IMG/VR virus record: IMGVR_UViG_3300032516_000001
Coordinates: 124,001 to 188,000 of that record
DNA length: 64,000 bases
Strand: one strand, 5' to 3'
In this document: in pieces, positions 7,125 to 58,584 of the stretch
How positions within the stretch are numbered: position 1 is the first letter of the stretch
Layout of the letters: the number at the start of each line of letters is the position of its first letter
Program-made: the position numbers and the translations under genes
The notes under the pieces: model-generated
The model's input: only the letters and a program-made list of their open reading frames with translations
Told to the model about the DNA's origin: nothing
Database searches by the model: none

Positions 7125-8924
7125 TTATGGACGCCATACCCATCGTTTCTTACCAAGATCCCATATTTTACTGAAACCCTGTTGTGTCCGTAATTCTTCT
7201 TCCGTAGTTAATGATTTTTTCTCGTTTCCTTTTTTCCGAAGGCCCGATTTGTGGTATCTTTTGTTTGCCTTTACCCAATAATAATCTGGAAGTACTTCCC
7301 CATCCAACTTAAATCCAAGTTTATTATATATCCTACCACTAAACAAACGATTATCAGAAAATGACACAATTGACGTTGGGTCATTTTGTTGTATGAAAAG
7401 ACCGAATATTTTCGACCATACACCATGAATTTTATACTCCGAATTAGAAACCATTCTGAGCAATTCCCAGGGATGAATAGATTGACGAGTTGGATACCCA
7501 AAGGAGATTGCGGCTATTATTTTATTATCTAGGAATACTCCATAATGGAGTTTAGCATTACAACTCCCTATGTAATGAAATTCATCATATAATGGTTTAA
7601 CTTCAGAATGTAAAACAGTCCGTATTTTGCATTCTGAAGGGCGGATAGATTGTGCTCCGGAAAGTGATAATCGATTTTTCAATAATTGTTCAACTTTTGT
7701 TCGTTTAAACGTCCATTCATCTTCAAACAAGGAAATGAAATCAAAACCAGCATTAATGGCGTTATTATATTTTTGTAAATCCCGTCGTTTTGCCCCGAGT
7801 CCACTATGCCAACGGAGTCCGTTATACTCAAGTAGAAAATTTTTACTAGGAATATAAATATCATATTTATACTTATCGATAGGGTGTTCCATTATAACTT
7901 CTAAACCGAGGCTTTCAAACCATGATGCTAAGTCCTGCTGAGCCATACTGATATGATTAGAAGCGCACCCGCAGGTAAGCGACGAACCTTTGACTATGTT
8001 ACCCCATATTGGATCATATCTTTCACCACAAGCGCCACATAAAGCTGGGAATGGCTCACAATATTTTTTTACATCTTCGAGTGGCTGAATCCATCCAGAC
8101 GGAATATCATTAACTGAAATCGGGGTCTTAAGGCTTCTTAGTAATTGTTCATTTTCTTTATACCATTTAACAGCTCTTGACTGACATAAACCACATCTGG
8201 TTGTTTTACCAGCGGTAACATCACATATAATGGACTCTAAAATCCCGCCACATTTACACTTCCATTTAACTTTCTTATTTGACCCGGGTGAGATGCTTTG
8301 CGGGTCAGACATTCTAAGTTGGCCAAATTCAGTATTGGTCCAGTATTCTAGGGATTTAACATTACATAATCCACAAGAAGAAGTGTGTCCTGATGTTACT
8401 AGCCAAATCGGTCTAACCGTTGTCTGTCCGCAATCACATTTCCATAACACTTCCGTATGAGAAGATGGATGAGATTCACATGGGTTGGCCATTTTAAGTT
8501 TGCCATATTTAGTAACCCGAAAATGTTCGGCAGATAATATTGAGCACTTTCCGCATGTTTTAGTGTGGCCCGAAGTAACAGAAGTAACTTGGATATCGAC
8601 TTCACGTCCACAATCACAAATCCAAGTGTGTTTTTTCTTGGATTTAGGCAATAAATCTTGTGGAAATTTTAGTCTTAAACTTCCGTATTTAATATTTTCC
8701 CAATAATCAGCGGTTAAAAGTCCGCATTTGCCGCAAGAAACAGTGCCGCCAGATACAACATCACAAACGGAAGCTATAACACTTCTGCCACAATCACAGA
8801 TCCATTCGACTTTGCGATGTGAACCCCGTGATGAGTCCGATGGACTCATCATCCGAAGTTTACCATATTTTATATTCTGAAAGTGATTGGCAGATAAAAA
8901 TGTAGTTGCAATTGTGTCCATCAC
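7125..8924 (-). CDS. Homing-endonuclease-like protein: Zn-ribbon repeats, PD-(D/E)XK nuclease, Hef-like GNAT-type C-terminus
   Basis: Repeated W.C.CG...SCG.C units; YDIYIP..LLEYNGLRWH nuclease motif; WELLRM..SFSDNR..GRIY.KLGF..KIWDLG. Start is GTG 8924 or ATG 8921. Confidence 0.75.
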   Translation of the reverse strand: MMDTIATTFLSANHFQNIKYGKLRMMSPSDSSRGSHRKVEWICDCGRSVIASVCDVVSGGTVSCGKCGLLTADYWENIKYGSLRLKFPQDLLPKSKKKHTWICDCGREVDIQVTSVTSGHTKTCGKCSILSAEHFRVTKYGKLKMANPCESHPSSHTEVLWKCDCGQTTVRPIWLVTSGHTSSCGLCNVKSLEYWTNTEFGQLRMSDPQSISPGSNKKVKWKCKCGGILESIICDVTAGKTTRCGLCQSRAVKWYKENEQLLRSLKTPISVNDIPSGWIQPLEDVKKYCEPFPALCGACGERYDPIWGNIVKGSSLTCGCASNHISMAQQDLASWFESLGLEVIMEHPIDKYKYDIYIPSKNFLLEYNGLRWHSGLGAKRRDLQKYNNAINAGFDFISLFEDEWTFKRTKVEQLLKNRLSLSGAQSIRPSECKIRTVLHSEVKPLYDEFHYIGSCNAKLHYGVFLDNKIIAAISFGYPTRQSIHPWELLRMVSNSEYKIHGVWSKIFGLFIQQNDPTSIVSFSDNRLFSGRIYNKLGFKLDGEVLPDYYWVKANKRYHKSGLRKKGNEKKSLTTEEELRTQQGFSKIWDLGKKRWVWRP

Positions 8925-8964: not shown

Positions 8965-9654
8965 TCAGCCAAACACGCCTTGGAACAGGGTAGATCCCAT
9001 TCCTGGAAGAAGAATCGGATTATTACCAGCATCAAGTAAATCACCATAATTATCTGGTGACTCACCATACACCGTAGCCCCATCCGTTACATCGGTCACA
9101 GTTGCCGAAGCATCTTCTGCTACAATTGCTGAATCTGACGGGAAACTCGCGCTGATGCTGTTGAGCCAGCAAGCTTGATAAAATGTGATGAGTGCGAGAT
9201 TCCCAGAACCGTCACTAGCCGTTACTGGAGCTCCATAAATCTTAGTATCATTAGCATTCGTCACGAGTTCCGAAAACACTAATTCTGATTTGATATCAAA
9301 TGGCCATTTGTGTTGACGAAGACTTCTTACCAGACCATCAACACCACCACGATAACCAACTTCCTGAGCAATACCAGCGGTGTAGAGCAAAGTGCGGTTC
9401 AGGGTCAGCGTCATCGGCTCAGTGACACTGGGCACGAGTTCCTGAATCTTATCCCCGAAACCAACACCACGCACCGGATCGATTGTACGAGCTTCATTCC
9501 AGTCAAAAGTCGAAAGAACACCTATCTGTCTCTCAACTACTGGATCAGCACCCGGGTAGGGCTTGGAAATAACCCGGTTCTTCTGCGAAATCGCTACGCG
9601 CGTATTTGGTGAAGAACCACGCTGGTAGATGTAATTGTTTGCTGGAGCTGCCAT
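8965..9654 (-). CDS. Tail tube protein
   Basis: QIGVLSTFDWNE.RTIDPVRGVGFGD.IQELVP..TLTLNR..LY pattern resembles myovirus tube proteins; ATG at 9654 preferred over TTG 9675. Confidence 0.7.
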   Translation of the reverse strand: MAAPANNYIYQRGSSPNTRVAISQKNRVISKPYPGADPVVERQIGVLSTFDWNEARTIDPVRGVGFGDKIQELVPSVTEPMTLTLNRTLLYTAGIAQEVGYRGGVDGLVRSLRQHKWPFDIKSELVFSELVTNANDTKIYGAPVTASDGSGNLALITFYQACWLNSISASFPSDSAIVAEDASATVTDVTDGATVYGESPDNYGDLLDAGNNPILLPGMGSTLFQGVFG

Positions 9655-9740
9655 ATTTTCATAAGACACAAACATTCAAAAATTAATTTATATGTAAATC
9701 AATAATATAATAAACTGATTATTTGAGTGTAATTTATCTT

Positions 9741-11345
9741 ATGCCAATTAGAACCAAGGAGGATAAAGAACAAAGAAAAATAATGGAAGCAAACAAAACT
9801 GAAGAGTATAGAATCTTTTATGGTAATAATCAAAACTTAATACAAGAATGCAAATTATGTCACGACAAAAAACCTCTAAATGAATTCGTTTCTAATTATT
9901 CATTCAGATTCAGATGTAAAAAATGTCACCGTACGAAAACATATAGATGGAGAAATGAGAATAAACCAGCCTTCATAGAAATCAGACAACGTAGAGGAAA
10001 AAGATCTGCAGCATTCATCAGATCATTAAAAGAAGGAAAATCTTGTTGTCAATGTGAAAAACCATTTCCTCCGCATGTTTTGGATTTCCATCATTTATTC
10101 GATAAAGAATGGACAATTTCTCAGCTATATGGGAAAAGTCATGATAGAATACTGAAAGAAATAGGAAAATGTCAATTATTATGTGCTAATTGTCATAGAG
10201 ATACGACTCAAAACGAAATTTCTAAGATACCTATTCTAAAAAACAGATATTATGCCTCTGCATTAACTGATACCGAGATTAATATAGGAGATGCAACCAA
10301 GTTATGTATAAAATGTAACAAAACTAAACATATTAATGACTTTACTTTATTAAAGATAGGTAAACGTTTCACATATTGTAGAATGTGCATGAGAGAATAT
10401 AATACTACCCTATCTAAAAACAGAAAAAACAGAGCAGCAAAAGAAACTGTTAGAAATGAAAAAGATATGGCAGTATGCGTAGATTGTGGTAATAAATTTC
10501 ATTATTGGATATTTGACACTGATCATATAGGAGAAGACAAAATTGGAAATATAAATATTCTACAAAACGGATCGATACATGAAGTCAAAGATGAATTGAA
10601 TAAATGCGACATAATTTGTGTTAATTGTCATAGAAAACGAACTTGGCAATGGAGGAAAAATTCAGAACCATGTATATGCGGGTTTAAACCAAGAAGTGCA
10701 TCAGAAAAATCAAAACACATTAAAGATTGTCCGCTCCAAGAAAAACCAATCATAAACGAGTCAGAAGTTGATACCTTCATACAAAAAATAGAATCATTCA
10801 GAACAAATAACTTAGAAGAATCTCATGCAATACTCGATAAATATCATTATGCTAAATTTGGTAGATCAGCCTACGTTGTATATAAAGCATTATATGATAA
10901 TGAAATAGTAGCTATCGTGAAATTCGCTACCCCAGTGAGAAAAGAAGTTGCCACGTCTTTAGGGTGGAATTACTCAGAAGTATTGGAGTTAGATAGATTT
11001 TGTATCCTGCCTAAATTTCAAGTAAAAAATTTAGCGTCTAAAGTTATGGCACAAGTGATAAAGTTAGTAAAATCAGATTTTCCGCATATAGTGTTATTAG
11101 TATCATTTGTCGATCCAGAACAGGGGCATATCGGGACTATATATAAAGCATCCAATTGGACATATATTGGAACTACGGCCAATTCCTATACGTATATAGA
11201 TGAAAAAGGCGACGAAATTAATAAAAAAACCATTTACAACAGAGCAATAAGTAATAACATGAAGGAGAAAGAATATGCAGAGAAAATGAATTTGTCGAAA
11301 GTAAAAATAGGAGTAAAGGATAAATATGGGTACGAACTTAATTGA
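9741..11345 (+). CDS. Double-HNH endonuclease fused to a C-terminal Mom-like (GNAT) domain
   Basis: LDFHH..CANCHR and DTDH..CVNCHRKRT modules, then LDKYHY..KFATPVR..EVLELDRFCI..LVSFVDP.QGH.GTIYKASNW. ATG 9741 follows TAATTT by 5 nt. Confidence 0.75.
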   Translation: MPIRTKEDKEQRKIMEANKTEEYRIFYGNNQNLIQECKLCHDKKPLNEFVSNYSFRFRCKKCHRTKTYRWRNENKPAFIEIRQRRGKRSAAFIRSLKEGKSCCQCEKPFPPHVLDFHHLFDKEWTISQLYGKSHDRILKEIGKCQLLCANCHRDTTQNEISKIPILKNRYYASALTDTEINIGDATKLCIKCNKTKHINDFTLLKIGKRFTYCRMCMREYNTTLSKNRKNRAAKETVRNEKDMAVCVDCGNKFHYWIFDTDHIGEDKIGNINILQNGSIHEVKDELNKCDIICVNCHRKRTWQWRKNSEPCICGFKPRSASEKSKHIKDCPLQEKPIINESEVDTFIQKIESFRTNNLEESHAILDKYHYAKFGRSAYVVYKALYDNEIVAIVKFATPVRKEVATSLGWNYSEVLELDRFCILPKFQVKNLASKVMAQVIKLVKSDFPHIVLLVSFVDPEQGHIGTIYKASNWTYIGTTANSYTYIDEKGDEINKKTIYNRAISNNMKEKEYAEKMNLSKVKIGVKDKYGYELN

Positions 11346-11646
11346 AGTCACGAATAACTATGCCGAACTTCGTAAAAGACAAATATTACGACGACGGTTC
11401 GAAACACGAGAATTCATTATAAGTCTTAAACAACAACCATGTACTGATTGTGGCGGTACATTCCATTACTGTCAAATGGATTTTGTTGCTAAAAATGGCA
11501 ATGAACCATTCAAAATAAGCAATTTTCTCAATAGGTCGAGAAAACGTATAATACTAGAAATTAATAAACGTGATTTGGTTTGCGCGAATTGCGGCAGGCT
11601 TCGAACCTGGAATACGCAACGAGCTAAAAGATCGGGGCCTACTTAA
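11326..11646 (+). CDS. Small single-module HNH protein
   Basis: CTDCG..QMDF..DLVCANCGRLRT; the His positions are degenerate. Confidence 0.6.
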   Translation: MGTNLIEVTNNYAELRKRQILRRRFETREFIISLKQQPCTDCGGTFHYCQMDFVAKNGNEPFKISNFLNRSRKRIILEINKRDLVCANCGRLRTWNTQRAKRSGPT

Positions 11647-11956: not shown

Positions 11957-12024
11957 ATTAAATACCTTTTTCCCCTGGCCACAGATGAAGTAGCCAGGGG
12001 AAATATTGATTCATCAGTATCTGT

Positions 12025-12597
12025 TTATGGTCCAGGACCAGTGGGTCCAGTAGCGCCCGCAGGACCAGTTGCTCCAGTAGCGCCCTCAGGACCAGTGGGT
12101 CCAGTAGCTCCAGTAGCGCCCTCAGGACCAGTGGGTCCAGTTGCTCCAGTAGCGCCCTCAGGACCAGTGGGTCCAGTAGCTCCGGTGACGCCCGCAGCTC
12201 CCTCAGGACCAGTGGGTCCAGTAGCTCCGGTGACGCCCGCAGCTCCCTCAGGACCAGTGGGTCCAGTGACGCCTTGAACACCAGTGGCGCCTTGAACACC
12301 AGTGGCGCCTTGAACACCAGTGGCGCCCTGTGGCCCTGTGGCACCCATCGCTATTACTGTTAGCGCACCAGTATTATATTCAGGATCTCCAGTCCATTTA
12401 TAGATGAGCCCAGTTGTTAACCGCTGAGCTTCAAGACTTGTGAATTGCGCCCCAGTACAAACAGTTAGCTCGCTAGTTATGTCGAAAGCCGGACCACGAG
12501 CCGGCGGAGCGGAACTCTTCGGAATTGTTCGGGCAGGGTGACCGGCAGCCATTGTTATGGCACTACCAACGGTGTTGTACACATAAAGTGGTGGCAT
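12025..12597 (-). CDS. Collagen-like (Gly-X-Y) repeat virion protein
   Basis: C-terminal run of GAT/GVQ/GPT/GPE triplets; tandem DNA repeats at about 12040-12335. Confidence 0.8.
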
Positions 12598-39243: not shown

Positions 39244-40818
39244 CTAAAATCGATAAATATATTTGATCTTAGCCGGAATTGCAATCTTGGTCAAACCAAG
39301 CTTATCAACGTACTCACGTTCTTTTAATTTCAAATTACAAGCCTTATCATAAACAGATTTTTTGTTTATTTCATTTCCATCTTTATCAACGTAAACATAA
39401 CTAGAAGTAGTTTGACCAACTTCTTCCCAATTACTTGCTTTATATATGGTACCAACATGTCCAAATCGTGGATCGGCAAACGAAACAAGACATTTAATTT
39501 CGGGAAAAGCGCTAGACACCTTCTTAATAACTCTAGACATGAGATAAGAAGCAAAATTCTTCTTATGATAACTGGGATCAATACAGAATCTGTCTAATTC
39601 CAAGACTTCGCCATGATTTAAATCAAGTGTATGCGCTATACCTTGTCTAACAGGAGTAGCGAATTTAATAACAGCAACAACTAGTTCTTGAATTTTGGCA
39701 ACAAATATAACTTTAGATGCTCGGCCAAATCCAGCATAATGATACTTATCCAAAAATTCGGTAACATCTGGAGAATGGAGTACTTGGGAAATAACTATAG
39801 AATCAAAAGAAAAATCGATAACATCAATATTTGATCTGTTATGATAACAAACCCCATTTCCAATATACTTACTATAATTACAATTCCAGCACAAAAGCTG
39901 ATATTTTGACATTAACGATGGCTTTTTAACTAATTTTTTGTAAAGATCGATTCCAGATCCTTCACCTATCTTTCTACATGCTGAACCATCATTGTATTTA
40001 TGATCCAAAGTTAACTTATAAAGATCCTTCTCTCCACAACATACGCATTTTCCACCCAATAATGTTAAACAACTCTGTCTGAATTTATCAGTTATTATTC
40101 TACGGCAAGGCAGACATCTATTACTGCCATGAGACAACTGTGATGGGAATTCGTTAACGTCTTTTTCTTTTAAACAAATATTACAAATTTTGGTTATACC
40201 TGATGAAATAACTACTTTTAACTGATGTATTGGGTTAATTCTATATTTCTTATTATTACAATTGTGGCACAATACCTGATAACGTGTTTTATCTGACTCA
40301 CCGTTTAAAATCCTACGTTTCCAACCAAGACTGCCAAAACTACGTTCAGTATTACCATCGTTATTTACATGATCTATTGTCAGAAACTCTTTAATATCTA
40401 AACCGCATGTAACGCATTTTTGACCCAATAAATCAAGAACTTGATTAATAATTGACTGTCTGTACACTCTATGACTTTCAACTACATGTTCAGCGTTATC
40501 ATCAGTCCATTTTTTTATTCTTACCCTAATCTTATCAAGATTTTTCAATCTGTATTCTGATTTATTCTTTAGTATTGCTGCACGATTTTCTTTATAATAT
40601 TCATGTTTATCATTCAAAATTTGATCATGATTATCAGCATACCATTTCTTCCTGATAACTTTTAACTTTTCACTATTTTCTATTTCATATATTTTATTAT
40701 GTTTCTTTCTACATTCCTTACACTTTGAGTCTTTCCCGTTTTTCTTAATTGTGTTATTAAAATACTCAGAAAGCAATTTTTCAACACCACATTTAACACA
40801 AATTTGTGTTGCATCCAT
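39244..40818 (-). CDS. Double-HNH endonuclease fused to a C-terminal Mom-like (GNAT) domain
   Basis: C..CG..LTIDHVNNDG..CHNCN and C.CCG..LTLDH.YNDG..CWNCN; then LDKYHY..KFATPVR..EVLELDRFCI..SFADP..GH.GTIYKASNW. Confidence 0.78.
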   Translation of the reverse strand: MDATQICVKCGVEKLLSEYFNNTIKKNGKDSKCKECRKKHNKIYEIENSEKLKVIRKKWYADNHDQILNDKHEYYKENRAAILKNKSEYRLKNLDKIRVRIKKWTDDNAEHVVESHRVYRQSIINQVLDLLGQKCVTCGLDIKEFLTIDHVNNDGNTERSFGSLGWKRRILNGESDKTRYQVLCHNCNNKKYRINPIHQLKVVISSGITKICNICLKEKDVNEFPSQLSHGSNRCLPCRRIITDKFRQSCLTLLGGKCVCCGEKDLYKLTLDHKYNDGSACRKIGEGSGIDLYKKLVKKPSLMSKYQLLCWNCNYSKYIGNGVCYHNRSNIDVIDFSFDSIVISQVLHSPDVTEFLDKYHYAGFGRASKVIFVAKIQELVVAVIKFATPVRQGIAHTLDLNHGEVLELDRFCIDPSYHKKNFASYLMSRVIKKVSSAFPEIKCLVSFADPRFGHVGTIYKASNWEEVGQTTSSYVYVDKDGNEINKKSVYDKACNLKLKEREYVDKLGLTKIAIPAKIKYIYRF

Positions 40819-40937: not shown

Positions 40938-41021
40938 TTTTCTGAACGTAGAAGATAATTTTCTGACCGTAGAAGGTATTTTTCTGACCGTAGAAGGTAT
41001 TTTTCTGACCGTAGAAAGTAT
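40938..41021. repeat. Four tandem 21-bp repeats (TTTTCTGACCGTAGAAGGTAT)
   Basis: Units start at 40938, 40959, 40980 and 41001; each contains the dyad TTCT-N6-AGAA. Confidence 0.92.
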
Positions 41022-41135: not shown

Positions 41136-42407
41136 TTAAACATTTACAGCCAAGAAATTTCGAACACGATCATCTAAAATTTGAAGATCATCCTTAAGTT
41201 CATGCTCCCATACAGTCAGACACTTTAGTCCAACCTCATTCCACTGATTGATAATCTTTCGCGCATGAACCTTGTTGCTTTCGCCAGTTTTATCTTTCCC
41301 GTGCCAATAATCACCAAGAATTTCAACGACATGAGTCACGCGTTTGAAAGATGGAGACCCGTCTTGTTTCGGATAAACAGGAAAACAAAAATCCGGATTT
41401 CGATTGTTCTGAACGGATGGAATAAGCTTCCAGAAACTCCCATTGCCAGAGAAACAAAAGAATGGGTATAACTTATTAAATGCCAACTCGGGCTTATTCG
41501 GACCAGCACGACGCGAATGCTCCAAATGCTTACGCGCATACTCCGGGTTCATCATCGGATGAGGCACACCATATTTCTTCATACATGTAGATCGGTACGA
41601 TTCTTCATTATGGGTCAAACTGTAAATCAAACGATTACTCTCAATGGACATAAATCGTCTTAGTGATTCATTCATCGATGATTTGGTCTTAGAGTCCTGA
41701 GTAGTCCACTCAACCCCGTAACGCACCAGATTAGTTTGTTTGATTTTTTCTTGGACTTCTGGCGCTTGCGCTGGGTCCGGTACACCGAATTGGGCGATAT
41801 TGGTTTGACGCCCCTTCTCACGAATTTCTGGAACTCGTAACGTTTGTTCATCACCATAACGCTCGAGATTGGTGGCGAGTTGTTTGGCCCTGATCTCAGG
41901 AACTTGAGACGGATTCTCTACACCGTATTTCTCAAGGTTTGTTTGACGAATCTTTTCCTTTATTTCGGGACGCGCAAAATTGTCCTTCGGGAGATGTGCG
42001 GTTCTATCTTTCCCGTCCCAATGTGATTGGACCTGTTTGTATAGAGTGGACTTCTTACAGAACACATTCTCGGCGCCATAACGTTCCGTTATTGTGGCCG
42101 CTTTCTTCTCAGCAGCACCCGGCACCATCAAAGCGTTTGTAACATCGTCCCCGTATTTCTTCTGGAATGTTGATTTGATCCGTTCAAGAGCAACGGCATT
42201 CTTATCTCTTGACTGCCAAGCCTGACAGTCTTTCCTATGGCGTTTCATCTGAGTCAGAGATGTGCTTTTATGACCGCAGAGACACGCTAACGGTTTTCTA
42301 TCTGGATTTGCTGCTAAAAACTCAGGGCACTTACGTTTATGTCCCGAAGTTACCGGCCTATCAAATTCTTTTCCACAGAATTCGCAATGAAAACTCACAA
42401 TCATCAT
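41136..42407 (-). CDS. Homing-endonuclease-like protein with KYGV..P repeats and a C-terminal Vsr/PD-(D/E)XK-like nuclease
   Basis: About 7 repeats of the (K/R)YG.EN..Q.PEI type; NPDF..VEILGDYWHG..CLTVWEHE. Confidence 0.75.
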   Translation of the reverse strand: MMIVSFHCEFCGKEFDRPVTSGHKRKCPEFLAANPDRKPLACLCGHKSTSLTQMKRHRKDCQAWQSRDKNAVALERIKSTFQKKYGDDVTNALMVPGAAEKKAATITERYGAENVFCKKSTLYKQVQSHWDGKDRTAHLPKDNFARPEIKEKIRQTNLEKYGVENPSQVPEIRAKQLATNLERYGDEQTLRVPEIREKGRQTNIAQFGVPDPAQAPEVQEKIKQTNLVRYGVEWTTQDSKTKSSMNESLRRFMSIESNRLIYSLTHNEESYRSTCMKKYGVPHPMMNPEYARKHLEHSRRAGPNKPELAFNKLYPFFCFSGNGSFWKLIPSVQNNRNPDFCFPVYPKQDGSPSFKRVTHVVEILGDYWHGKDKTGESNKVHARKIINQWNEVGLKCLTVWEHELKDDLQILDDRVRNFLAVNV

Positions 42408-42469: not shown

Positions 42470-43360
42470 CTAAATTCCCAAGAACCTTCTGGGTGTTAAT
42501 GCTCCACGCCCGACCGAAGGTCCGAATGACGACCTTATACCTATCCCATAACGTGACTGTTTCAAACCGCGTATTATTTTAACAGTTTCTTTTGCAGCAG
42601 TAACCATTGAATCAAACCGGGACTGTGCGTCTGATGCCAGAGATTGATATTTAGAAGATTTTTCAATAGATAGAGACACACCCCCTATGTTATAGTCGAA
42701 TTCATCCACGACCCAGTTAAGAGCCAATGCATTCACTGCATATATAGTAGCTCCAACCAGGCACAACGATCTCCAATTCCTATGCTGTGTAATTAACTGG
42801 TCTAAACTGGCATAGAACGTTTGCGGAGGATACATATTTAGTGCATCGTTTGATATGCGCAAGAATTCCAATAATTCCTCATCTTCCCAAATAAATCCAA
42901 ATACTCTATTATACTGATTAATCGTAGTTTCTCCCGCAGGTGGCGTGAAATGATAGTTGCGATCAGGATTGTTATCTCGTAACATTATTCTAAGACCATG
43001 AACTAAATCATATTCAATGGGTGTAAAATCAGTACAAGTTGTAACTGTTGGTTCAACAACATTAAATTCTTGTAATACTTCAACGAATTGACTATTTAGA
43101 TACTGTCTGAAATGCCATCGGATTCTATAGGGTCCGATATTAGCATCTGCCGGAATTATGAATGATGCATAATATTCCCCGATCGATGGATTTATTGGGA
43201 TACGATTTGCTGGCGATAACAACACTTCCACGCCAGTTGTATAATCGTATATGTCATATGAGACTTCAGCAGCATTTACTGGATTGCCACCTTTAGCTTT
43301 TAAGTATAAAGCAAGATCCCCACGGCAAAGCTCTTGACACCTCTTATATGCACAGCCCAT
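42470..43360 (-). CDS. Probable neck / head-tail adaptor protein
   Basis: Ig-like N-terminal half; WEDEELLEFL..ALNMYPP..YQSLA pattern of adaptor proteins; ATG 43360 lies 5 nt after TATTGT. Confidence 0.55.
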   Translation of the reverse strand: MGCAYKRCQELCRGDLALYLKAKGGNPVNAAEVSYDIYDYTTGVEVLLSPANRIPINPSIGEYYASFIIPADANIGPYRIRWHFRQYLNSQFVEVLQEFNVVEPTVTTCTDFTPIEYDLVHGLRIMLRDNNPDRNYHFTPPAGETTINQYNRVFGFIWEDEELLEFLRISNDALNMYPPQTFYASLDQLITQHRNWRSLCLVGATIYAVNALALNWVVDEFDYNIGGVSLSIEKSSKYQSLASDAQSRFDSMVTAAKETVKIIRGLKQSRYGIGIRSSFGPSVGRGALTPRRFLGI

Positions 43361-43393
43361 ATAACACAATACATATTAATTGGCTATCACCGC

Positions 43394-53020: not shown

Positions 53021-55113
53021 TTTTGATCCCATTCAACCGGAGAAAGGCCTTCTTCCCCTCTAGTCAATAGACACTTCTCTAAATCGTTTGTTAACGTTGA
53101 CCATTCAAATTTTTTGGCGTGTTCTCTACAACCTTCAGCTAGTCGCCTTCTTGATTTATCATTTTTCAAAATATGAATAAGTTTCTCGACATATTCGTCC
53201 TTATACTGTGCAAACGGAGGCGGAACATTTAACCCAACACCGCCCCATAATTCAGCAAAAGCATCAGCCGTGCATAAGACCGGGACCGTTCCAGCCGCAC
53301 AAGCTTCTAGAACAGTGACTCCAAATGCTTCCGTGTAACGTACTGGATCACATGGATAGGCAAGAATTTCAGAAGTAGCCATCTCTTCTTGAATTCTCTG
53401 TCTACTAACTGACTGATAAGTATGGACACCCTTGTCCTTAAGTCTTTTCATTGCCTCAAGCATGTATCTGGATCTATTAGCAAGCTCCGCCATGAATCCA
53501 GTAGCATTCGTAAGACGCGCGAAGCCCTCTAGCCCACTGAAATTATAGAATATATGAAGAGTGGCGTGCGGCACAGCTTGCTTGATCTTTGGAAATGCCT
53601 CCAACATCCAATGCAATCCGCGGTCATGAGATGAGGCCCAGATCATTTTACCTGGCGTTTTCTCCTTCGGTTTGAAATCATCGGTATTCACGCCATTATA
53701 TAACACTTTCCATTTTTCGGCCGGAAAACCAGAAGCCGGCTTCATGAAATTAGCGTGAGAATGAGAAACCACAGCCAGTGTGTCAACATATGACTCCCAG
53801 CCGGGTTCGCAGAGACTGAAATCGGTAACCTGTTGATCAAAAAGCCTGAATTGGGTTGGGTTAGCTATTTTCAACGGTTCTGGAGTCATCCATGAACACA
53901 AAGCATCCCAATGTTGATCTTTATATATCGATGCCCATTCATCGTAATTGCAACAAACCACGCGTTCTAAATTAGCTGCTTTAGTAATTCCGGTAAATAT
54001 TGTTATCCAATGCCCCCTACGAGCCATTTCGAGGGCATACATGATAAATGTCATTTCAGAACCAGTAAGCCCACGGTCTGATGTCCATATATTATCTACA
54101 TCCATGGGTGCACGTATCTGAGACGGTGGGAAAAAGAACGCGCACCTAAGCTTTCTACTAGATGGCTGTATTGGATCTACTATTGGTTGTATTTGCTTTA
54201 TTTGCTCTCGAGTTCTCTTTATTTGCTCTCGAGTTCCTTTTAAATTCCAGTTATTTACAAGTGGATAACCAAGATTTCTCTTTTTATGCCAAATTGCTTC
54301 ATTTGAGGCATGTGATCTGGATTGCCGTGGAAGAGGAAAAACGCAATCCGCATTAACTACATATACGATATTTGATGGATTGTTAACCCATTGGATACCT
54401 TTATTAGTTAATCGATCAGCGACATTGCTATTTTGATAGGCATAAGCCCCATCTAAATCCTCATCCCAGCCATTGATATCGAGAATTGACGCCAATTTGC
54501 AGCTTTCATTTTTAGCATAGAAGAAAATAGATGAAATACCACCAATTGGCATAGACAACTTTGGATCATTATTGCCTTTAAGTGGATCTATCAGTAATGA
54601 ATCAATCGATTCGCATTCTTGATTTAGAATGCTCCACTTATAGTTGTTGAGCCTCCCGGATCCGATATCAGAAACATATTGATCGACTTGGTTTTCTTGG
54701 TATCTCGGAAAATCGGGGCTTAACTCCGGTAAACTCTTATATTGATTGGGACTTATTAATCCCGCGTTTATCCCATTAGCTTTATGGAACAAAGCATGTG
54801 TCTTTACACAATTTGACGGTAACCAAGTGTAATCATTGATAAATAAAACGACTTCACTATTGGCATGAACTAAGGCGGTATTTATATATCTACCAAGGCT
54901 GTCAAGAGGAAACGGATTACTGATTGGTTCAATATGTCTTACTTTAAAAGCATACAATTTTTGGATTTCTTCAACCTCATTCTTCCTATATTTATAGATT
55001 CCATCCGAAATAATGAGTTCGAAATCAGTGAAAGATTGTTGTGCTAAGCTATTAAATATGATATCAAGTCCACCAACTCGCATCGTTGGCAGAATAATTG
55101 AGATGTACGGCAT
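53017..55113 (-). CDS. Two-domain glycosyltransferase (GT2 + GT4-like)
   Basis: ISIILPT..LIISD..FINDY..GWDED N-terminal half; NGVNTDDF..SSHDRGL..E.FG..VLEA.AAG C-terminal half. Confidence 0.85.
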   Translation of the reverse strand: MPYISIILPTMRVGGLDIIFNSLAQQSFTDFELIISDGIYKYRKNEVEEIQKLYAFKVRHIEPISNPFPLDSLGRYINTALVHANSEVVLFINDYTWLPSNCVKTHALFHKANGINAGLISPNQYKSLPELSPDFPRYQENQVDQYVSDIGSGRLNNYKWSILNQECESIDSLLIDPLKGNNDPKLSMPIGGISSIFFYAKNESCKLASILDINGWDEDLDGAYAYQNSNVADRLTNKGIQWVNNPSNIVYVVNADCVFPLPRQSRSHASNEAIWHKKRNLGYPLVNNWNLKGTREQIKRTREQIKQIQPIVDPIQPSSRKLRCAFFFPPSQIRAPMDVDNIWTSDRGLTGSEMTFIMYALEMARRGHWITIFTGITKAANLERVVCCNYDEWASIYKDQHWDALCSWMTPEPLKIANPTQFRLFDQQVTDFSLCEPGWESYVDTLAVVSHSHANFMKPASGFPAEKWKVLYNGVNTDDFKPKEKTPGKMIWASSHDRGLHWMLEAFPKIKQAVPHATLHIFYNFSGLEGFARLTNATGFMAELANRSRYMLEAMKRLKDKGVHTYQSVSRQRIQEEMATSEILAYPCDPVRYTEAFGVTVLEACAAGTVPVLCTADAFAELWGGVGLNVPPPFAQYKDEYVEKLIHILKNDKSRRRLAEGCREHAKKFEWSTLTNDLEKCLLTRGEEGLSPVEWDQK
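54197..54236. repeat. 21-bp-period tandem duplication in the interdomain linker (TREQIK x2)
   Basis: TTTATTTGCTCTCGAGTTC at 54197 and 54218. Confidence 0.85.
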
Positions 55114-55122
55114 GATATACCT

Positions 55123-56085
55123 CTATGTTGATCTTACTTGAGACTCGATCCATTTGTATGTCCGATTCATACCATCTTCAAAACCAATATGCGGTTCCCA
55201 TTTCAACACACTACGAAGCATTGAGTTATCTGAATTTCTGCCACGAACACCCTGTGGTTTTGATTCGTCATATCGCTTTCTAATAGTCTTTCCGGCAATT
55301 TTTGCTACAATATCACACAATTCATTAATGGACACTAAACGATCCGTTCCAAGATTGATAGGATCGTGGTGATCGGATTCCATCAGACGTATCAATCCAT
55401 CGACACAATCATCTATGAAACAATATGAACGTGTCTGTTTTCCATCACCCCAAACCTCTATTTCATCATTAGACTTCGCTAATGCTATTTTACGGCATAT
55501 AGCGGCGGGACTTTTTTCACGCCCACCATCATAAGTTCCCAGTGGACCGTATATATTATGGAACCGTACTACACGCGTATCGAAACCGAGATCTTCACGA
55601 TAATGACGACATATTCTTTCCATCGTTAATTTTTCCCAGCCATATCCATCTTCTGGTAATGCCGGGTATGCGTCCTCTTCACGCAGCGGAATGACGTTTA
55701 CTTGTTCCTGCATGCTTGTCGGATATATACATGCTGAGGATGAAAATAGAAGACGTTTCGCATTATGTCTGAATGCTTCCTCGATAACATTCAAGTTAAT
55801 ACGCGAATTATTCACTATTATTTGACATCTGTGGCTCTCAATGAAACCTATCCCCCCCATATCAGCAGCTAAATGATAAATTCTATCATACGGTTCATCA
55901 TCGAAAAACTTTTTCACAACAGATTCAGAGCGTAAATCAGTATTTGCGTAAAATTGGGTAGCAGTTGTCTTCCCAAATTCCGGAAATTTCAAATCCACTC
56001 CGGTAACTTCATGGCCATCATTAATTAACCTTGTAGTGAGATGACTCCCTATAAACCCGCCGGCCCCTGTTACCAGAATTCTCAT
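55123..56085 (-). CDS. GDP-mannose 3,5-epimerase-like SDR
   Basis: TGAGGFIGSHL, HLAADMGGIGFI, SSACIYP, YGWEKL, RFHNIYGP.GT.DGGREK.PAA.CRK. Confidence 0.88.
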   Translation of the reverse strand: MRILVTGAGGFIGSHLTTRLINDGHEVTGVDLKFPEFGKTTATQFYANTDLRSESVVKKFFDDEPYDRIYHLAADMGGIGFIESHRCQIIVNNSRINLNVIEEAFRHNAKRLLFSSSACIYPTSMQEQVNVIPLREEDAYPALPEDGYGWEKLTMERICRHYREDLGFDTRVVRFHNIYGPLGTYDGGREKSPAAICRKIALAKSNDEIEVWGDGKQTRSYCFIDDCVDGLIRLMESDHHDPINLGTDRLVSINELCDIVAKIAGKTIRKRYDESKPQGVRGRNSDNSMLRSVLKWEPHIGFEDGMNRTYKWIESQVRST

Positions 56086-56093
56086 TTTATCAC

Positions 56094-57275
56094 CTATAGA
56101 GTGCTCGGAATCCTTAGTGACAAATCTAAAACTTTGATCTTAGATGATTCAGCTAATCTATTACGAATATCAGGATAATCAACACAGAGTATGACAAAAT
56201 CAGCATTGTTCACAACGTAATCGATATTCGGCGCATGAATCCAAGATGGTTTGATTTCAAGAACAATGTTCTTAACAGTTGGGTCATAGACAATCGGGTT
56301 TAGTTTCTCAATAGCGTTGGCTATCGTCATACCAACAGCATCAGTTATATCAAGCGCATTGGGCTTATAACCTAAGCCAACAACTGCAATTTTACGATTC
56401 GTGACCTCATGTAATTTGACCCATTCAGTAGCTATTTTTGCATATTTATTGAGTGTCTGCGCGTGTGAATTCATCACAGCATCAGATGTAGGAGACTGAT
56501 GGATGTCGTTCCAGATCAAACTATCTCTAGGGAGGCAAGGCCCGCCCGGAGGAGGGCCGGGTAACATATAACTTGTTCCGCCAATTCTCGGTTCAAATCC
56601 AAGTGCTCTGAAAACAACATCGGCATCTGCTCCCAGTTTTGATAGCTTGGCATTGATATCGTTGCCCCACGCACCACGCGCTGACAAGGTTGCGTTTATT
56701 GCTAATTTGGCGCAAGCGATTGAAATGACATTGCCACGCACTTCATTTGCGCATTTATTGTTCCAAATTGATGCTAATTCATCCTGAAGCTCTTTGCTGT
56801 CGACGTCATCACAACCCAAAAACATAATATGAGCATGAGCAAAATCGTAAGCTACCTGCCCCAATCTGATGAGTGGAGGATTATAGATTATCCGAAGTTT
56901 ATTGTGACCATTACAAACTTCACGCGCATCGCGTGGGTCTAAAGTTGACACCACATTTACTTTATATTTATCAGAAACAATGCTGTCGATTTCATTAATG
57001 ATATTAGTTATGAATGCCGAAGATAGCGTTTTACCGGATAATGGAGTAGGTGCTATAACAAACGCCCACTCTGTTTTCTCTACAGCCTCGACAGATGAAT
57101 CTGCTAAATTGAAATTCCATTCTATATGCTCAAACAGCGGGTTTTCTTTCCGCCGTAGCTTTCGCATCAACTCTTTATTTACATCGTACCCCCATACTTC
57201 GTGACCTAAACATCCAAGGTGATATGCCATGGGAAGACCGACCTTCCCGAGACCAAAAACGGCAATGCTTGTCAT
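56094..57275 (-). CDS. UDP-glucose/GDP-mannose dehydrogenase family protein
   Basis: GLGKVGLP, AKLAINA, GGPCLPRD, GLGYKPN..D. Confidence 0.85.
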   Translation of the reverse strand: MTSIAVFGLGKVGLPMAYHLGCLGHEVWGYDVNKELMRKLRRKENPLFEHIEWNFNLADSSVEAVEKTEWAFVIAPTPLSGKTLSSAFITNIINEIDSIVSDKYKVNVVSTLDPRDAREVCNGHNKLRIIYNPPLIRLGQVAYDFAHAHIMFLGCDDVDSKELQDELASIWNNKCANEVRGNVISIACAKLAINATLSARGAWGNDINAKLSKLGADADVVFRALGFEPRIGGTSYMLPGPPPGGPCLPRDSLIWNDIHQSPTSDAVMNSHAQTLNKYAKIATEWVKLHEVTNRKIAVVGLGYKPNALDITDAVGMTIANAIEKLNPIVYDPTVKNIVLEIKPSWIHAPNIDYVVNNADFVILCVDYPDIRNRLAESSKIKVLDLSLRIPSTL

Positions 57276-57276
57276 T

Positions 57277-58584
57277 TCATTTTCCCTGTTTCAGTGCCTG
57301 CATTTTGAATTCCCACGCGTTATAGTGGCCCAATCTAGAAATATCAACAAACCCAATTTTTCTTAACAGTGACTCTAAGGATGACTCGGTGTATCCCCAT
57401 AAATGAAAATCGGCGTCATAAGTATTTCCACGCGTTCCCCAAATACATGTTGCCCATTCATCAACCATCCCATCAGCAATAATCCTCTTTAATGCGAATT
57501 CCATATCAGTTACCATTATATATAACGATCCACCAGGTCGTAGTATGCGTAAACACTCATTTAGAACTTTCTCGCCAGCCTCGGCTGACAAATGATTGAT
57601 CAGATGGATCATTTTAATCTTATCGGCGTGTCCATCGTGAAGTGGAATAATACCTTTGCTAAGATCACATACAATATCAACCCCTGGAATTGCCCTAACA
57701 TCTACATTGGGATGATAAACATCAGCAGAACCGCCACCCCCTAATTCGACCCACGTCGATTGCCCACACGTAGAACATGTCGGGCCAACACCCCCTGGTG
57801 GCGGCATCGGACCAATTGCTTGATACTGTCGTACGTCCATACTCCGCTTTACATCAACTTGGCTGGAGTACATCTCATCATCTTTGATAAATTTTGCCCA
57901 CATATAAGAATTACCATTGAAAATCCTGTAATGTTCGAGTTTCAATCCAAGCAGGGCTTGTAACTGTTCTATTGTATACCCTCTATTGTACGGACCTTCG
58001 TTAGTAAGTGCATTCTCATAAGGATAGTAAACTGTCGTATAAACCATGCAGAGAAATGTGCCACCGGGTTTAAGACATCGTTTAAATAATTCAACTACAT
58101 ATTGAACTTTTCCCGGTTGTATAGCATGCAAAACCCCATCCAAAAGTATTAAATCAAACATTCCTAACTGATTAATATCATCATATTCTTTAAGCAAAAC
58201 AGCTTTTGATGGATAACCTTCTAAAATTTTCGAGGTTAACTGCACATTTGAAGGAGTTATATCGACAGCAATAACATCCGCACCAGCTTGTGACATATAA
58301 AGTGAATCAACACCCATGCCACAGCCAAAATCCAAAACCCGCAAGCCTTTAAGATTTATAGCTAAAAGTTCTTCATAATAAATCTCACCTGTAAGAACTT
58401 TGTCCCAACGCATTCTGTTACGGAATTCCCAGTGTTCTTTAACATGTCGCTTTGTATCTTCGATATTATTAAGTGCGTCACTAGTTTTCTGAGCTGGTCC
58501 ATCATCCCAAAAACACGCGTCCCAATATGCTATGGAATCCCGACTGATTTGCGAATTTTCGTTCTTCATCGCATGGCCTTCCAT
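57277..58584 (-). CDS. Protein with two class I SAM methyltransferase domains
   Basis: VLDFGCGMG in domain 1; CSTCG linker; VELGGG..LRPGG in domain 2. Confidence 0.82.
   Translation of the reverse strand: MEGHAMKNENSQISRDSIAYWDACFWDDGPAQKTSDALNNIEDTKRHVKEHWEFRNRMRWDKVLTGEIYYEELLAINLKGLRVLDFGCGMGVDSLYMSQAGADVIAVDITPSNVQLTSKILEGYPSKAVLLKEYDDINQLGMFDLILLDGVLHAIQPGKVQYVVELFKRCLKPGGTFLCMVYTTVYYPYENALTNEGPYNRGYTIEQLQALLGLKLEHYRIFNGNSYMWAKFIKDDEMYSSQVDVKRSMDVRQYQAIGPMPPPGGVGPTCSTCGQSTWVELGGGGSADVYHPNVDVRAIPGVDIVCDLSKGIIPLHDGHADKIKMIHLINHLSAEAGEKVLNECLRILRPGGSLYIMVTDMEFALKRIIADGMVDEWATCIWGTRGNTYDADFHLWGYTESSLESLLRKIGFVDISRLGHYNAWEFKMQALKQGK

What the first reader, a model, noticed from the sequence alone, without database searches (positions are those of the whole stretch)
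39244..40818. Second HNH-Mom fusion with the same Mom domain on a different HNH subfamily
Seen: the C-terminal domain is more than half identical (by-eye alignment over about 110 aa) to that of 9741-11345, but the nuclease part is a different HNH type (LTIDH.NNDG..CHNCN versus LDFHH..CANCHR). The Hef-like C-terminus of 7125-8924 (ELLR..SFSD..G.IY..GF) looks like a more distant GNAT relative attached to a third nuclease class, PD-(D/E)XK. Inference: the GNAT module is repeatedly shuffled onto unrelated nucleases, which implies a selected partnership rather than chance fusion.
Basis: partly seen in the sequence, partly recalled or inferred. Interest (0 to 1): 0.66.

Follow-up and report, generated by a model that had tools for sequence, protein, structure and literature searches.

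The report
Mobile nuclease–Mom fusion genes, jumbo phage
This gene is one of five in a large phage genome that join a DNA-cutting enzyme to a Mom-type DNA-marking domain; they behave like mobile homing-endonuclease cassettes whose parts are swapped between neighbouring genes, a kind of fusion already reported for jumbo phages, though I found no report of this double-HNH version.

Summary
ORF 39244-40818(-) encodes a 524-aa protein: (zinc ribbon + HNH-type nuclease) x2, then a Mom (PF25680) domain. Its Mom domain is 48% identical to that of 9741-11345 over 197 aa, and 66/110 in the best window. 7125-8924 is a Hef-like Zn-finger + PD-(D/E)XK protein with a distant Mom domain.

The window lies in a 241.6-kb viral record with five nuclease-Mom fusions. 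The two HNH proteins are not independent fusions. Their N-termini are collinear homologues (hhalign 98%, E 2e-13) of one architecture that has about 85 metagenomic relatives.

Shuffling is real elsewhere. On a 146-protein Mom tree, DUF7487-REase N-termini sit inside the HNH clade at least four times, with one pair 91% identical in Mom only. B-type HNH modules also occur fused to C-type REase-Mom.

The site next to a conserved 299-aa gene is empty, holds A, holds F+A (this window), or holds one F-Mom fusion ORF in related phages. The genes come and go between conserved genes, as homing endonucleases do.

Both nuclease motifs and Mom active-site residues are conserved. This suggests a site-specific nuclease whose Mom domain marks self DNA, but that mechanism is inferred. 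REase-Mom fusions and their multiplicity in jumbo phages were published in 2021, so I rate this a new variant of a known kind.

The parts
39244..40818 (-). Gene A: 524-aa (zinc ribbon + HNN-type HNH) x2 + Mom fusion protein (P0001)
   Evidence: ORF. Pfam Mom and PHROG HNH/endonuclease VII hits. About 70 full-length metagenomic homologues. AF2 model with pLDDT 93.8.
40699..40806 (-). A, zinc ribbon 1 (aa 5-40; C7, C10, C33, C36)
   Evidence: C10, C33 and C36 are invariant and C7 is at least 90% conserved in 59 homologues. Weak profile hit to the Hpy99I zinc-ribbon region.
40234..40425 (-). A, HNH module 1 (aa 132-195; C135, C138, D149, H150, C184, N186, C187, N188)
   Evidence: C135, C138, D149, H150 and C184 are invariant; N186, C187 and N188 are at least 90% conserved. 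PHROG 2255/4234 HNH and 2633/1035 endonuclease VII.
40099..40194 (-). A, zinc ribbon 2 (aa 209-240; C212, C215, C235, C238)
   Evidence: All four cysteines are invariant. Aligns collinearly with zinc ribbon 2 of B.
39859..40056 (-). A, HNH module 2 (aa 255-320; C258, C261, D272, H273, C310, N312, C313, N314)
   Evidence: All named residues are invariant in 59 homologues.
39247..39816 (-). A, Mom domain (aa 335-524; H360, Y361, R410, S424, D449, R451, Y459 = Mu Mom H58, Y59, R111, S124, D149, R151, Y159)
   Evidence: Pfam PF25680 E 6.8e-21. PDB 8bv8 Mu Mom by sequence at E 9e-7 and by fold at E 4e-11. Alignment A1.
41136..42407 (-). Gene F: 423-aa DUF7487 + Vsr-like PD-(D/E)XK nuclease without Mom, inserted between the conserved 299-aa gene and A
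   Evidence: Pfam DUF7487 E 8.5e-47. Absent at this site in L007, L009, L010, L034, L035 and L037. Fused to Mom as one 627-aa ORF in L033.
40938..41021 (.). 21-bp x4 tandem repeat in the F-A spacer, about 120 bp upstream of the start of A
   Evidence: There are 4 copies against 0.01 expected, and none elsewhere in the window. Function unknown.
42470..43369 (-). Conserved 299-aa gene that anchors the variable site holding F and A
   Evidence: 36-71% identical in 17 related viral contigs. The downstream site is variably occupied.
9741..11345 (+). Gene B: 534-aa (zinc ribbon + HNH) x2 + Mom fusion (P0002), opposite in strand to its neighbours
   Evidence: About 16 full-length homologues. Mom domain at 10749-11342.
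11326..11646 (+). Solo 106-aa HNH gene overlapping the end of B
   Evidence: PHROG 3106/2255 HNH. In relatives, a solo HNH is often the only occupant of this slot.
7125..8924 (-). Gene C: 599-aa Hef-like protein. DUF4379 zinc-finger array (about 8175-8876) + Vsr/MTES_1575-like PD-(D/E)XK (7668-7934) + divergent Mom domain (7128-7649)
   Evidence: Present, absent or decayed at this slot in relatives.
8965..9675 (-). Conserved 236-aa gene flanked on both sides by the variable slots that hold B and C
   Evidence: 65-74% identical in 17 related contigs.

Best explanation
Gene A is a free-standing, homing-endonuclease-like mobile gene of an uncultured jumbo phage. Its product has two parts.
- A sequence-targeted nuclease: two zinc-ribbon + HNH modules in one chain, which could cut both strands as a monomer.
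- A catalytically competent Mom-type GNAT domain. In phage Mu this enzyme transfers glycine from Gly-tRNA(Gly) to N6 of adenine in double-stranded DNA.

A belongs to a large modular family. Interchangeable targeting and nuclease modules sit in front of a C-terminal Mom module: double HNN-type HNH, double HNH, DUF7487 + Vsr-like REase, and Zn-finger array + Vsr-like REase (the last is Hef-like).

New combinations arise when such genes land in tandem at the same intergenic hot spot and a deletion or recombination occurs just upstream of the conserved 'VDFxF' start of the Mom module.

Proposed working: the nuclease cuts unmodified target sites in genomes that lack the cassette, meaning co-infecting relatives and perhaps the host. 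The tethered Mom domain modifies adenines at or near the same sites in the carrier genome and so makes it immune. This would be a single-chain, mobile restriction-modification/homing unit.

Shown here: the domain identities, conservation of catalytic residues, family size, mosaicism, and presence/absence polymorphism.
Inferred: nuclease activity, DNA momylation, and the immunity logic.
For: Identity:
- Pfam and PHROG hits.
- Mu Mom 8bv8 is the top match by sequence and by fold.
- The AF2 model has pLDDT 93.8 and two helices (486-495, 500-507) at the position of Mom's HTH-like insert (PMC13219725).

Competence:
- Mom residues H58, Y59, R111 and Y159 are invariant in about 150 fusion proteins. 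D149 is changed in only one (a Q), and S124 is S or T.
- The C..C/DH/C.NCN motifs of both HNH modules are at least 90% conserved.

Mobility:
- Five Mom fusions plus Mom-less paralogues lie in one genome.
- B, C and the solo HNH sit in slots that are empty, differently filled, inverted or decayed in 17 relatives with a conserved backbone.
- The site after the 299-aa gene is empty, or holds A, F+A, an F-Mom fusion, or F alone.
- A and B have 31% GC against 40% for the window.
- C matches the Hef-like homing endonuclease family, with 9-11 places matching C per Campylobacter phage genome. Hef of phage U5 cleaves nrdB (PMC2988022).

Mosaicism.

Prior proposal of self-protection by momylation for REase-Mom fusions: PMC7824862.
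Against: - No activity was measured. No target site is known.
- Mu-essential R151 is not conserved. It is R in A and C, E in B, T in D and E, and variable across the family.
- The Mu dimer residue W48 is absent, so chemistry, acyl donor or oligomeric state may differ.
- Mom-less versions of each nuclease type exist in the same genome: F, the solo HNH, and a double-HNN gene at G000 104453-105370. These nucleases therefore do not strictly need a Mom partner.
- A keeps the same position in several related phages. That also fits a resident, useful gene rather than an actively homing one.
- A fused enzyme would also modify the competitor's DNA, so the outcome depends on kinetics that are unknown.
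Confidence: 0.55

Rival explanations
1. Phage weapon rather than selfish element. The fusions are resident restriction-modification-like enzymes that degrade host or superinfecting-phage DNA, while momylation protects the phage's own DNA. Several copies would broaden specificity. Mobility is incidental.
For: This was proposed for jumbo-phage REase-Mom fusions, with five Mom enzymes noted in phage PA5oct (PMC7824862). A is syntenic next to the 299-aa gene in at least five related contigs. Both domains keep their catalytic residues.
Against: Presence/absence, inversion and decay occur at identical intergenic slots. Alternative occupants share one site. GC is low. C is related to the experimentally supported homing enzyme Hef (PMC2988022). 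All of this is typical of homing genes. The two views share one biochemical mechanism and differ mainly in who benefits.
Confidence: 0.25
2. Cargo model. The Mom domain protects phage DNA from host restriction enzymes, as in Mu, and is unrelated to the fused nuclease's own cutting. Fusion merely lets a homing gene carry a benefit that favours its retention.
For: Mu Mom is an anti-restriction enzyme (PMC7261163, PMC13219725). Mom-less nuclease paralogues exist, so the nucleases can be tolerated without Mom. The same Mom module is moved between unrelated nucleases.
Against: Within this Mom clade, short Mom-only proteins are rare: 27 clusters, several of them fragments, against 140 hits among longer, nuclease-length proteins. 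No Mom-only gene was found in this genome. A pure cargo would work as well unfused.
Confidence: 0.2
3. Non-catalytic Mom. The GNAT domain is an exapted DNA-binding or base-flipping targeting domain for the nuclease and no longer modifies DNA.
For: R151, essential in Mu, is variable, and W48 is lost. In cultured-phage Hef-like proteins Y59 is L and D149 can be N. Pfam scores for the C-type domain fall below the cut-off.
Against: H58, R111 and Y159 are invariant, S124 is S or T, and D149 is changed in only one of about 150 proteins that otherwise share about 35-50% identity. That pattern points to retained catalysis.
Confidence: 0.1
4. A and B arose by independent attachment of the same Mom domain to two unrelated HNH subfamilies.
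For: The N-terminal regions give almost no BLASTP signal. Their terminal motifs differ, CxxCN against CxxCH. They are separated by a long branch on the N-terminal tree. P0142 and P0143 show that Mom exchange between the two lineages does occur.
Against: Profile-profile alignment is collinear over all four modules: probability 98%, E 2.2e-13. Both hit PHROG 2255 and 4234. P0143 aligns to both over nearly full length. All HNN and HNH Mom domains form one side of a 100/99 branch against the main REase-Mom clade.
Confidence: 0.15

Closest known systems
Phage Mu Mom (PF25680; PDB 8bv8), a Gly-tRNA(Gly)-dependent adenine N6 modifying GNAT
   Same: GNAT fold with Mom as the best structural and sequence match. 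H58, Y59, R111, S124, D149 and Y159 are conserved. Two helices lie at the position of the Mom-specific HTH-like insert.
   Different: Only about 20% identical. Always the C-terminal domain of a 500-600 aa nuclease rather than a 231-241 aa stand-alone protein. R151 is variable and the dimer residue W48 is absent. No com-like regulator was seen.
REase-Mom fusions of jumbo phages (Iyer et al. 2021, PMC7824862)
   Same: Same concept: a Mom domain fused to an endonuclease, several copies per jumbo phage genome, and predicted self-protection plus attack. Genes C, D and E are of this type (Vsr-like PD-(D/E)XK + Mom).
   Different: That paper speaks of REase-fold partners. A and B carry a tandem zinc-ribbon + HNH pair instead. 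The paper reports neither module swapping nor homing-like site polymorphism.
Hef and Hef-like free-standing homing endonucleases of T4-like and Campylobacter phages (PHROG 559/3339)
   Same: C matches the family over its full length (E 2e-68). Both are free-standing genes between conserved structural or replication genes, with many copies per genome. The C-terminal domain is homologous to Mom.
   Different: A, B, D and E have Mom domains much closer to canonical Mom than the Hef-like ones. A and B replace the REase with HNH modules. In the papers I could read, the Mom relationship of the Hef C-terminus is not discussed.
F-CphI / T4 endonuclease VII-type (H-N-N) homing endonucleases (PMC6083498)
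   Same: The nuclease modules of A have the DH...N...CxxCN pattern and hit the PHROG 'endonuclease VII' families 2633 and 1035.
   Different: A has two such modules, each with its own zinc ribbon, plus a Mom domain. No direct comparison with F-CphI was run.
Type IIG/IIC single-chain restriction-modification enzymes (e.g. MmeI, BcgI); comparison from general knowledge
   Same: Nuclease and DNA-modifying domains lie in one polypeptide, so cleavage and protection can share one targeting apparatus.
   Different: The modification domain is a tRNA-dependent GNAT rather than a SAM methyltransferase. The nucleases are HNH or Vsr-like. The context is mobile cassettes in a phage.

Membership tests
Mom family (PF25680) | Profile match above Pfam's gathering score | tested here: met
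   A 75.3 bits and B 83.7 bits against a cut-off of 27.1. D and E score 86.4 and 76.3 bits. C alone is below the cut-off at 23.7 bits, or 28.7 with neighbouring segments.
Mom family (PF25680) | GNAT fold closest to Mu Mom, with the Mom-specific helical insert | tested here: met
   Foldseek top hit is 8bv8 at E 4e-11 and TM(target) 0.63; other GNATs score E 1e-5 or worse. Helices 486-495 and 500-507 lie between strands, as in Mom's insert (PMC13219725).
Mom family (PF25680) | Catalytic residues H58, Y59, R111, S124, D149, R151, Y159 | tested here: inconclusive
   Six of seven are kept in A-E and in about 150 relatives. R151 is kept only in A and C and is variable in the family.
Mom family (PF25680) | Aminoacyl-tRNA-dependent modification of adenine N6 in dsDNA | not testable with these tools
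   Needs expression and nucleoside LC-MS or SMRT kinetics.
HNH / beta-beta-alpha-Me nucleases | D/H-H ... N ... H/N motif flanked by CxxC pairs, conserved in relatives | tested here: met
   Both modules of A and of B carry the motif. The residues are at least 90% conserved in 40 to 59 A-type and 14 B-type homologues. PHROG 2255 gives E 3.6e-21 for A and 6.5e-46 for B.
HNH / beta-beta-alpha-Me nucleases | Match to Pfam HNH (PF01844) or to a solved HNH structure by sequence | tested here: not met
   No PF01844 hit at E <= 0.1 for A or B. The only solved-structure hit is a weak one to Hpy99I, E 0.029, in zinc ribbon 1. Some homologues carry a precomputed PF01844 hit.
Free-standing homing endonuclease genes | Sporadic presence at the same intergenic site between conserved genes in related genomes, with alternative occupants and decayed copies | tested here: met
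   The slots around the 236-aa gene and after the 299-aa gene show this. L015 holds a C-like remnant.
Free-standing homing endonuclease genes | Cleavage of the cassette-less allele and gene conversion in mixed infection | not testable with these tools
   The host is unknown and the phage is uncultured. It is documented only for Hef of phage U5, which I know through the secondary source PMC2988022.
Hef-like homing endonucleases (gene C only) | Full-length similarity to proteins annotated as Hef-like | tested here: met
   PHROG 559 gives E 2.3e-68 over residues 41-598. tblastn finds 411 phage records, 31 of them covering at least 80% of the query and annotated as Hef-like homing endonuclease.
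Single-chain restriction-modification (type IIG-like logic) | Modification by the fused domain blocks cleavage by the fused nuclease | not testable with these tools
   Inference only.

The most novel reading that the evidence does not exclude
Mom-type, tRNA-dependent adenine hypermodification is the self-immunity mark of a large modular class of phage homing endonucleases. The class includes the long-known but mechanistically unexplained Hef-like family. These elements would then be mobile single-chain restriction-momylation units that can target invariant sequences in essential genes without needing a resistant target allele. They would diversify by domain-boundary recombination between tandemly inserted cassettes.
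Probability: 0.3. Interest if true: 0.75.

Novelty: new variant of a known kind. Interest (0 to 1): 0.5.

Why it matters
Mom's chemistry was solved only recently: glycine is transferred from charged tRNA onto adenine in DNA (PMC13219725). Most Mom relatives found here are not stand-alone anti-restriction enzymes but C-terminal modules of site-specific nucleases. If the fused domain marks the nuclease's own target sites, three things follow.
- It would explain how a homing or restriction nuclease can live safely in a genome that contains its target.
- It would give a function to the unexplained C-terminus of Hef-like endonucleases, which are common in T4-like and Campylobacter phages.
- It would provide a set of naturally re-targeted DNA-hypermodifying enzymes with different DNA-recognition modules.

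The site next to the 299-aa gene is also a clear natural example of how new multidomain enzymes arise from tandem mobile genes.

Tried and rejected
- Pfam found no HNH family for A or B at E <= 0.1, and NCBIfam found nothing for any of the six proteins. The nuclease assignment therefore rests on PHROGs, motifs and conservation.
- A sequence search of solved structures with the N-terminus of A gave nothing useful. The family profile gave only a weak Hpy99I hit.
- The Foldseek list for the full model was filled by GNATs, so the HNH modules were not placed structurally. I ran no further search on them.
- Megablast of A against 50,697 phage records found nothing. tblastn found no record covering at least 80% of A. 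The apparent HNH+Mom hits in Arthrobacter phage Wayne and Salmonella phage Munch were a separate HNH gene and a short protein.
- There are no tRNA genes in the window, so there is no phage tRNA(Gly) link here.
- The original Hef paper (Sandegren 2005) and Iyer 2009 are not held. I cite Hef through PMC2988022.
- The first quick Mom tree, which included Mu Mom and the C-type proteins, had long-branch warnings. I rebuilt it without them using the careful method.
- I considered metagenome assembly chimeras as the source of the mosaics and rejected this. The DUF7487-REase-Mom architecture recurs in contigs from JGI, NCBI, ENA and Logan, and in a 376-kb viral contig.
- I also did not run read mapping or complex prediction, because no claim depended on them.
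Full report
WHAT IS THERE

The window is bases 124001-188000 of a 241,648-bp IMG/VR virus record. CheckV estimates it as 57% complete, and the same protein also occurs on a 323-kb contig.

ORF 39244-40818(-) encodes a 524-aa protein (P0001, 'A').
- Pfam finds a Mom domain (PF25680) at residues 353-522, E 6.8e-21.
- PHROGs finds 'Mom-like DNA modification protein' (E 1.9e-25), plus HNH and endonuclease VII families in the N-terminal 320 residues.
- An AlphaFold2 model built on 59 homologues is confident (pLDDT 93.8). Its best structural match is the crystal structure of phage Mu Mom, 8bv8 (E 4e-11). Ordinary GNATs follow at E 1e-5 or worse.

The N-terminal part is not one HNH domain. The order is: zinc ribbon 1 (C7, C10, C33, C36), a long helical linker, HNH 1 (C135, C138, D149, H150, C184, N186, C187, N188), zinc ribbon 2 (C212, C215, C235, C238), and HNH 2 (C258, C261, D272, H273, C310, N312, C313, N314). 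All of these residues are invariant or at least 90% conserved across the family.

- The protein of 9741-11345 (P0002, 'B') has a Mom domain 48% identical to that of A over 197-198 aa (E 9e-60). The best 110-residue stretch has 66 identities.
- The quoted motifs are real. A ends its HNH modules in CxxCN (an H-N-N, endonuclease VII-like variant). B ends them in CxxCH.
- The protein of 7125-8924 (P0003, 'C') has a DUF4379 zinc-finger array, a Vsr/MTES_1575-like PD-(D/E)XK domain, and a divergent Mom domain. That domain is 25% identical to A's (BLASTP E 2e-9; PHROG 1384 E 1.6e-9; Pfam 23.7 bits, just under the cut-off).
- The whole of C matches PHROG 559/3339. It also matches 411 phage records, many annotated 'Hef-like homing endonuclease', with 9-11 matching places per Campylobacter phage genome.

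The genome has five nuclease-Mom fusions. Two lie outside the window and are repeats + Vsr-like REase + Mom:
- D, 504 aa, G000 55014-56528.
- E, 589 aa, G000 82795-84564.

It also has Mom-less paralogues of the same nucleases:
- F at window 41136-42407 (DUF7487 + REase).
- A solo HNH at 11326-11646.
- A double-HNN gene at G000 104453-105370.

ARE A AND B INDEPENDENT FUSIONS?

No, or at least nothing requires it.
- A has about 70 full-length metagenomic relatives (32-51% identity, 99% coverage). B has about 16. Many sit on 300-430 kb contigs.
- A profile of 40 A-type N-termini aligns to a profile of 14 B-type N-termini collinearly across ZnR1-HNH1-ZnR2-HNH2 (hhalign probability 98%, E 2.2e-13).
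- Proteins such as P0143 align to both over nearly full length.
- On the Mom tree, all HNN- and HNH-type proteins lie on one side of a 100/99 branch against the main REase-Mom clade, and the B type is nested among A types.
- On the N-terminal tree the two types are separated by a long branch. An accelerated B lineage would explain that.
- C, D, E and F all share one Vsr-like nuclease family, with motif D...E-x-x-G-x-x-W-H.

IS THE MOM MODULE SHUFFLED?

Yes, clearly, but in other places.

1. On the careful ML tree of 146 Mom domains, DUF7487-REase proteins are nested inside the HNN clade at least four times with strong support. The REase label needs at least 8 changes forced by starred branches, and no bootstrap tree makes it monophyletic.
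2. P0041 (double HNN) and P0074 (DUF7487-REase) are 91% identical over the last 209 residues and unrelated before them. The junction lies just upstream of the 'VDFSF' start of the Mom module.
3. P0136 and P0137 combine a B-type double HNH (46% identical to B residues 1-301, and nested in the B clade) with a C-type REase + Mom (49% identical to C residues 323-596).
4. P0142 and P0143 have an A-type N-terminus grouped with P0046/59/61 (97), but a Mom domain placed elsewhere across a 99/97 branch.

HOW THE SHUFFLING HAPPENS

The conserved 299-aa gene (42470-43369) has relatives in related contigs. Downstream of it the site takes five states:
- empty (L036, L038-L043);
- an A-type gene (L034, L035, L037, L007, L009);
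- F followed by A (this window);
- a single 627-aa DUF7487-REase-Mom ORF (L033, one of the closest relatives);
- F alone (L048).

F stops where the linker to Mom begins in the fused proteins. A tandem landing of two cassettes followed by a deletion, or the reverse (an insertion at the domain boundary), therefore accounts for the chimeras. Because the HNN-Mom proteins are far more diverse and the DUF7487 forms are nested within them, deletion after tandem insertion is the more parsimonious direction. This direction is inferred, not shown.

MOBILITY

- Around the conserved 236-aa gene (8965-9675), the backbone w174-w105-[slot]-w236-[slot]-w317-w395-w1236 is kept in 17 related contigs.
- The slots that hold B + solo HNH and C in this window are elsewhere empty, hold only a solo HNH, hold a Mom-less double HNH, hold a C-like gene in the other slot and orientation, or hold a decayed C-like remnant.
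- B and the solo HNH are on the opposite strand to nearly all neighbours.
- A and B have 31% GC against 40% for the window.
- These are the usual marks of free-standing homing endonuclease genes. Hef, the prototype of C's family, is reported to cleave nrdB of a related phage (PMC2988022).
- A itself is more stable. It keeps its place next to the 299-aa gene in at least five relatives, at 42-57% identity against 65-71% for the neighbour.

LIKELY FUNCTION

- Mu Mom transfers glycine from Gly-tRNA(Gly) to adenine N6 in dsDNA. H58, Y59, R111, S124, D149, R151 and Y159 line its active site (PMC13219725).
- In about 150 fusion proteins, H58, Y59, R111 and Y159 are invariant, D149 is changed in only one, and S124 is S or T. 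R151 varies, and the dimer residue W48 is not kept.
- The nuclease motifs are equally conserved.
- Short Mom-only relatives of this clade are few: 27 clusters against 140 hits among longer, nuclease-length proteins. None occurs in this genome.
- I therefore favour a nuclease that cuts unmodified targets, with a tethered Mom domain that modifies the same sites in the carrier genome. This is the logic Iyer et al. proposed for REase-Mom fusions of jumbo phages, where they also noted five Mom enzymes in phage PA5oct (PMC7824862). Here it is set in a homing context.
- No step of this mechanism was tested. The existence of Mom-less paralogues and the variable R151 are the main cautions.

NOVELTY

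Nuclease-Mom fusion and its multiplicity in jumbo phages are published. Four things appear to be additions, in that I found no paper in the library that describes them:
- the double zinc-ribbon + HNH partner, a family of about 85 clusters;
- the homology of the Hef-like C-terminus to Mom, with most catalytic residues retained;
- the documented recent module swaps;
- the single-site series of intermediates.

I rate this a new variant of a known kind, of moderate interest.

Noticed in passing
window 40938-41021: Four tandem copies of a 21-bp unit (TTTTCTGACCGTAGAAGGTAT) lie in the spacer between F and A, about 120 bp upstream of the start of A. The unit is unique in the window (4 matches against 0.01 expected). 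The spacing equals two helical turns, which suggests a protein-binding array, but its function is unknown.
   Followed up: partly
L048 3202-5501; also L044-L046: In four related contigs the 299-aa gene is split at about residue 133. An inserted 299-aa ORF has a weak TnsA-like endonuclease hit. The downstream piece starts with a HINT-like domain (PT-HINT, E 3.7e-5, below the cut-off). This looks like a 'fractured gene' with a split intein and a nuclease.
   Followed up: partly
G000:C1:104453-105370 and 107676-107933 (outside the window): There is a Mom-less double-HNN paralogue of A's N-terminus (36% identity, probably P0118), and a single-module fragment 2 kb away.
   Followed up: partly
L015 7687-8225: A roughly 540-bp remnant of a C-like gene keeps zinc-finger fragments and the last 54 residues. 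It lies in the slot where the window has an intact C, and the same contig has an intact C-like gene in the neighbouring slot on the other strand.
   Followed up: partly
window 39244-40818 and 9741-11345: Genes A and B have 31% GC against 40% for the window. F has 44% and C has 38%.
   Followed up: no
window 12025-12597 (with 11958-12344 on the same strand, other frame): A collagen-like tail-fibre gene carries 18-72 bp tandem repeats. The overlapping 128-aa ORF rich in PLV repeats looks like a by-product of the repeat.
   Followed up: no
L002 2039-3103 (G000 about 56536-57600): A full-length DnaJ-type co-chaperone gene (J domain plus CxxCxGxG zinc-finger repeats, judged by eye from the translation; no family scan was run) lies immediately downstream of fusion gene D.
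   Followed up: no
L013 1445-2615 (Synechococcus phage DSL-LC03): In a cultured T4-like cyanophage, a 'type II restriction endonuclease' gene and a 'Mom-like DNA modification protein' gene overlap by 38 bases. This may be a split or frameshifted REase-Mom fusion.
   Followed up: no
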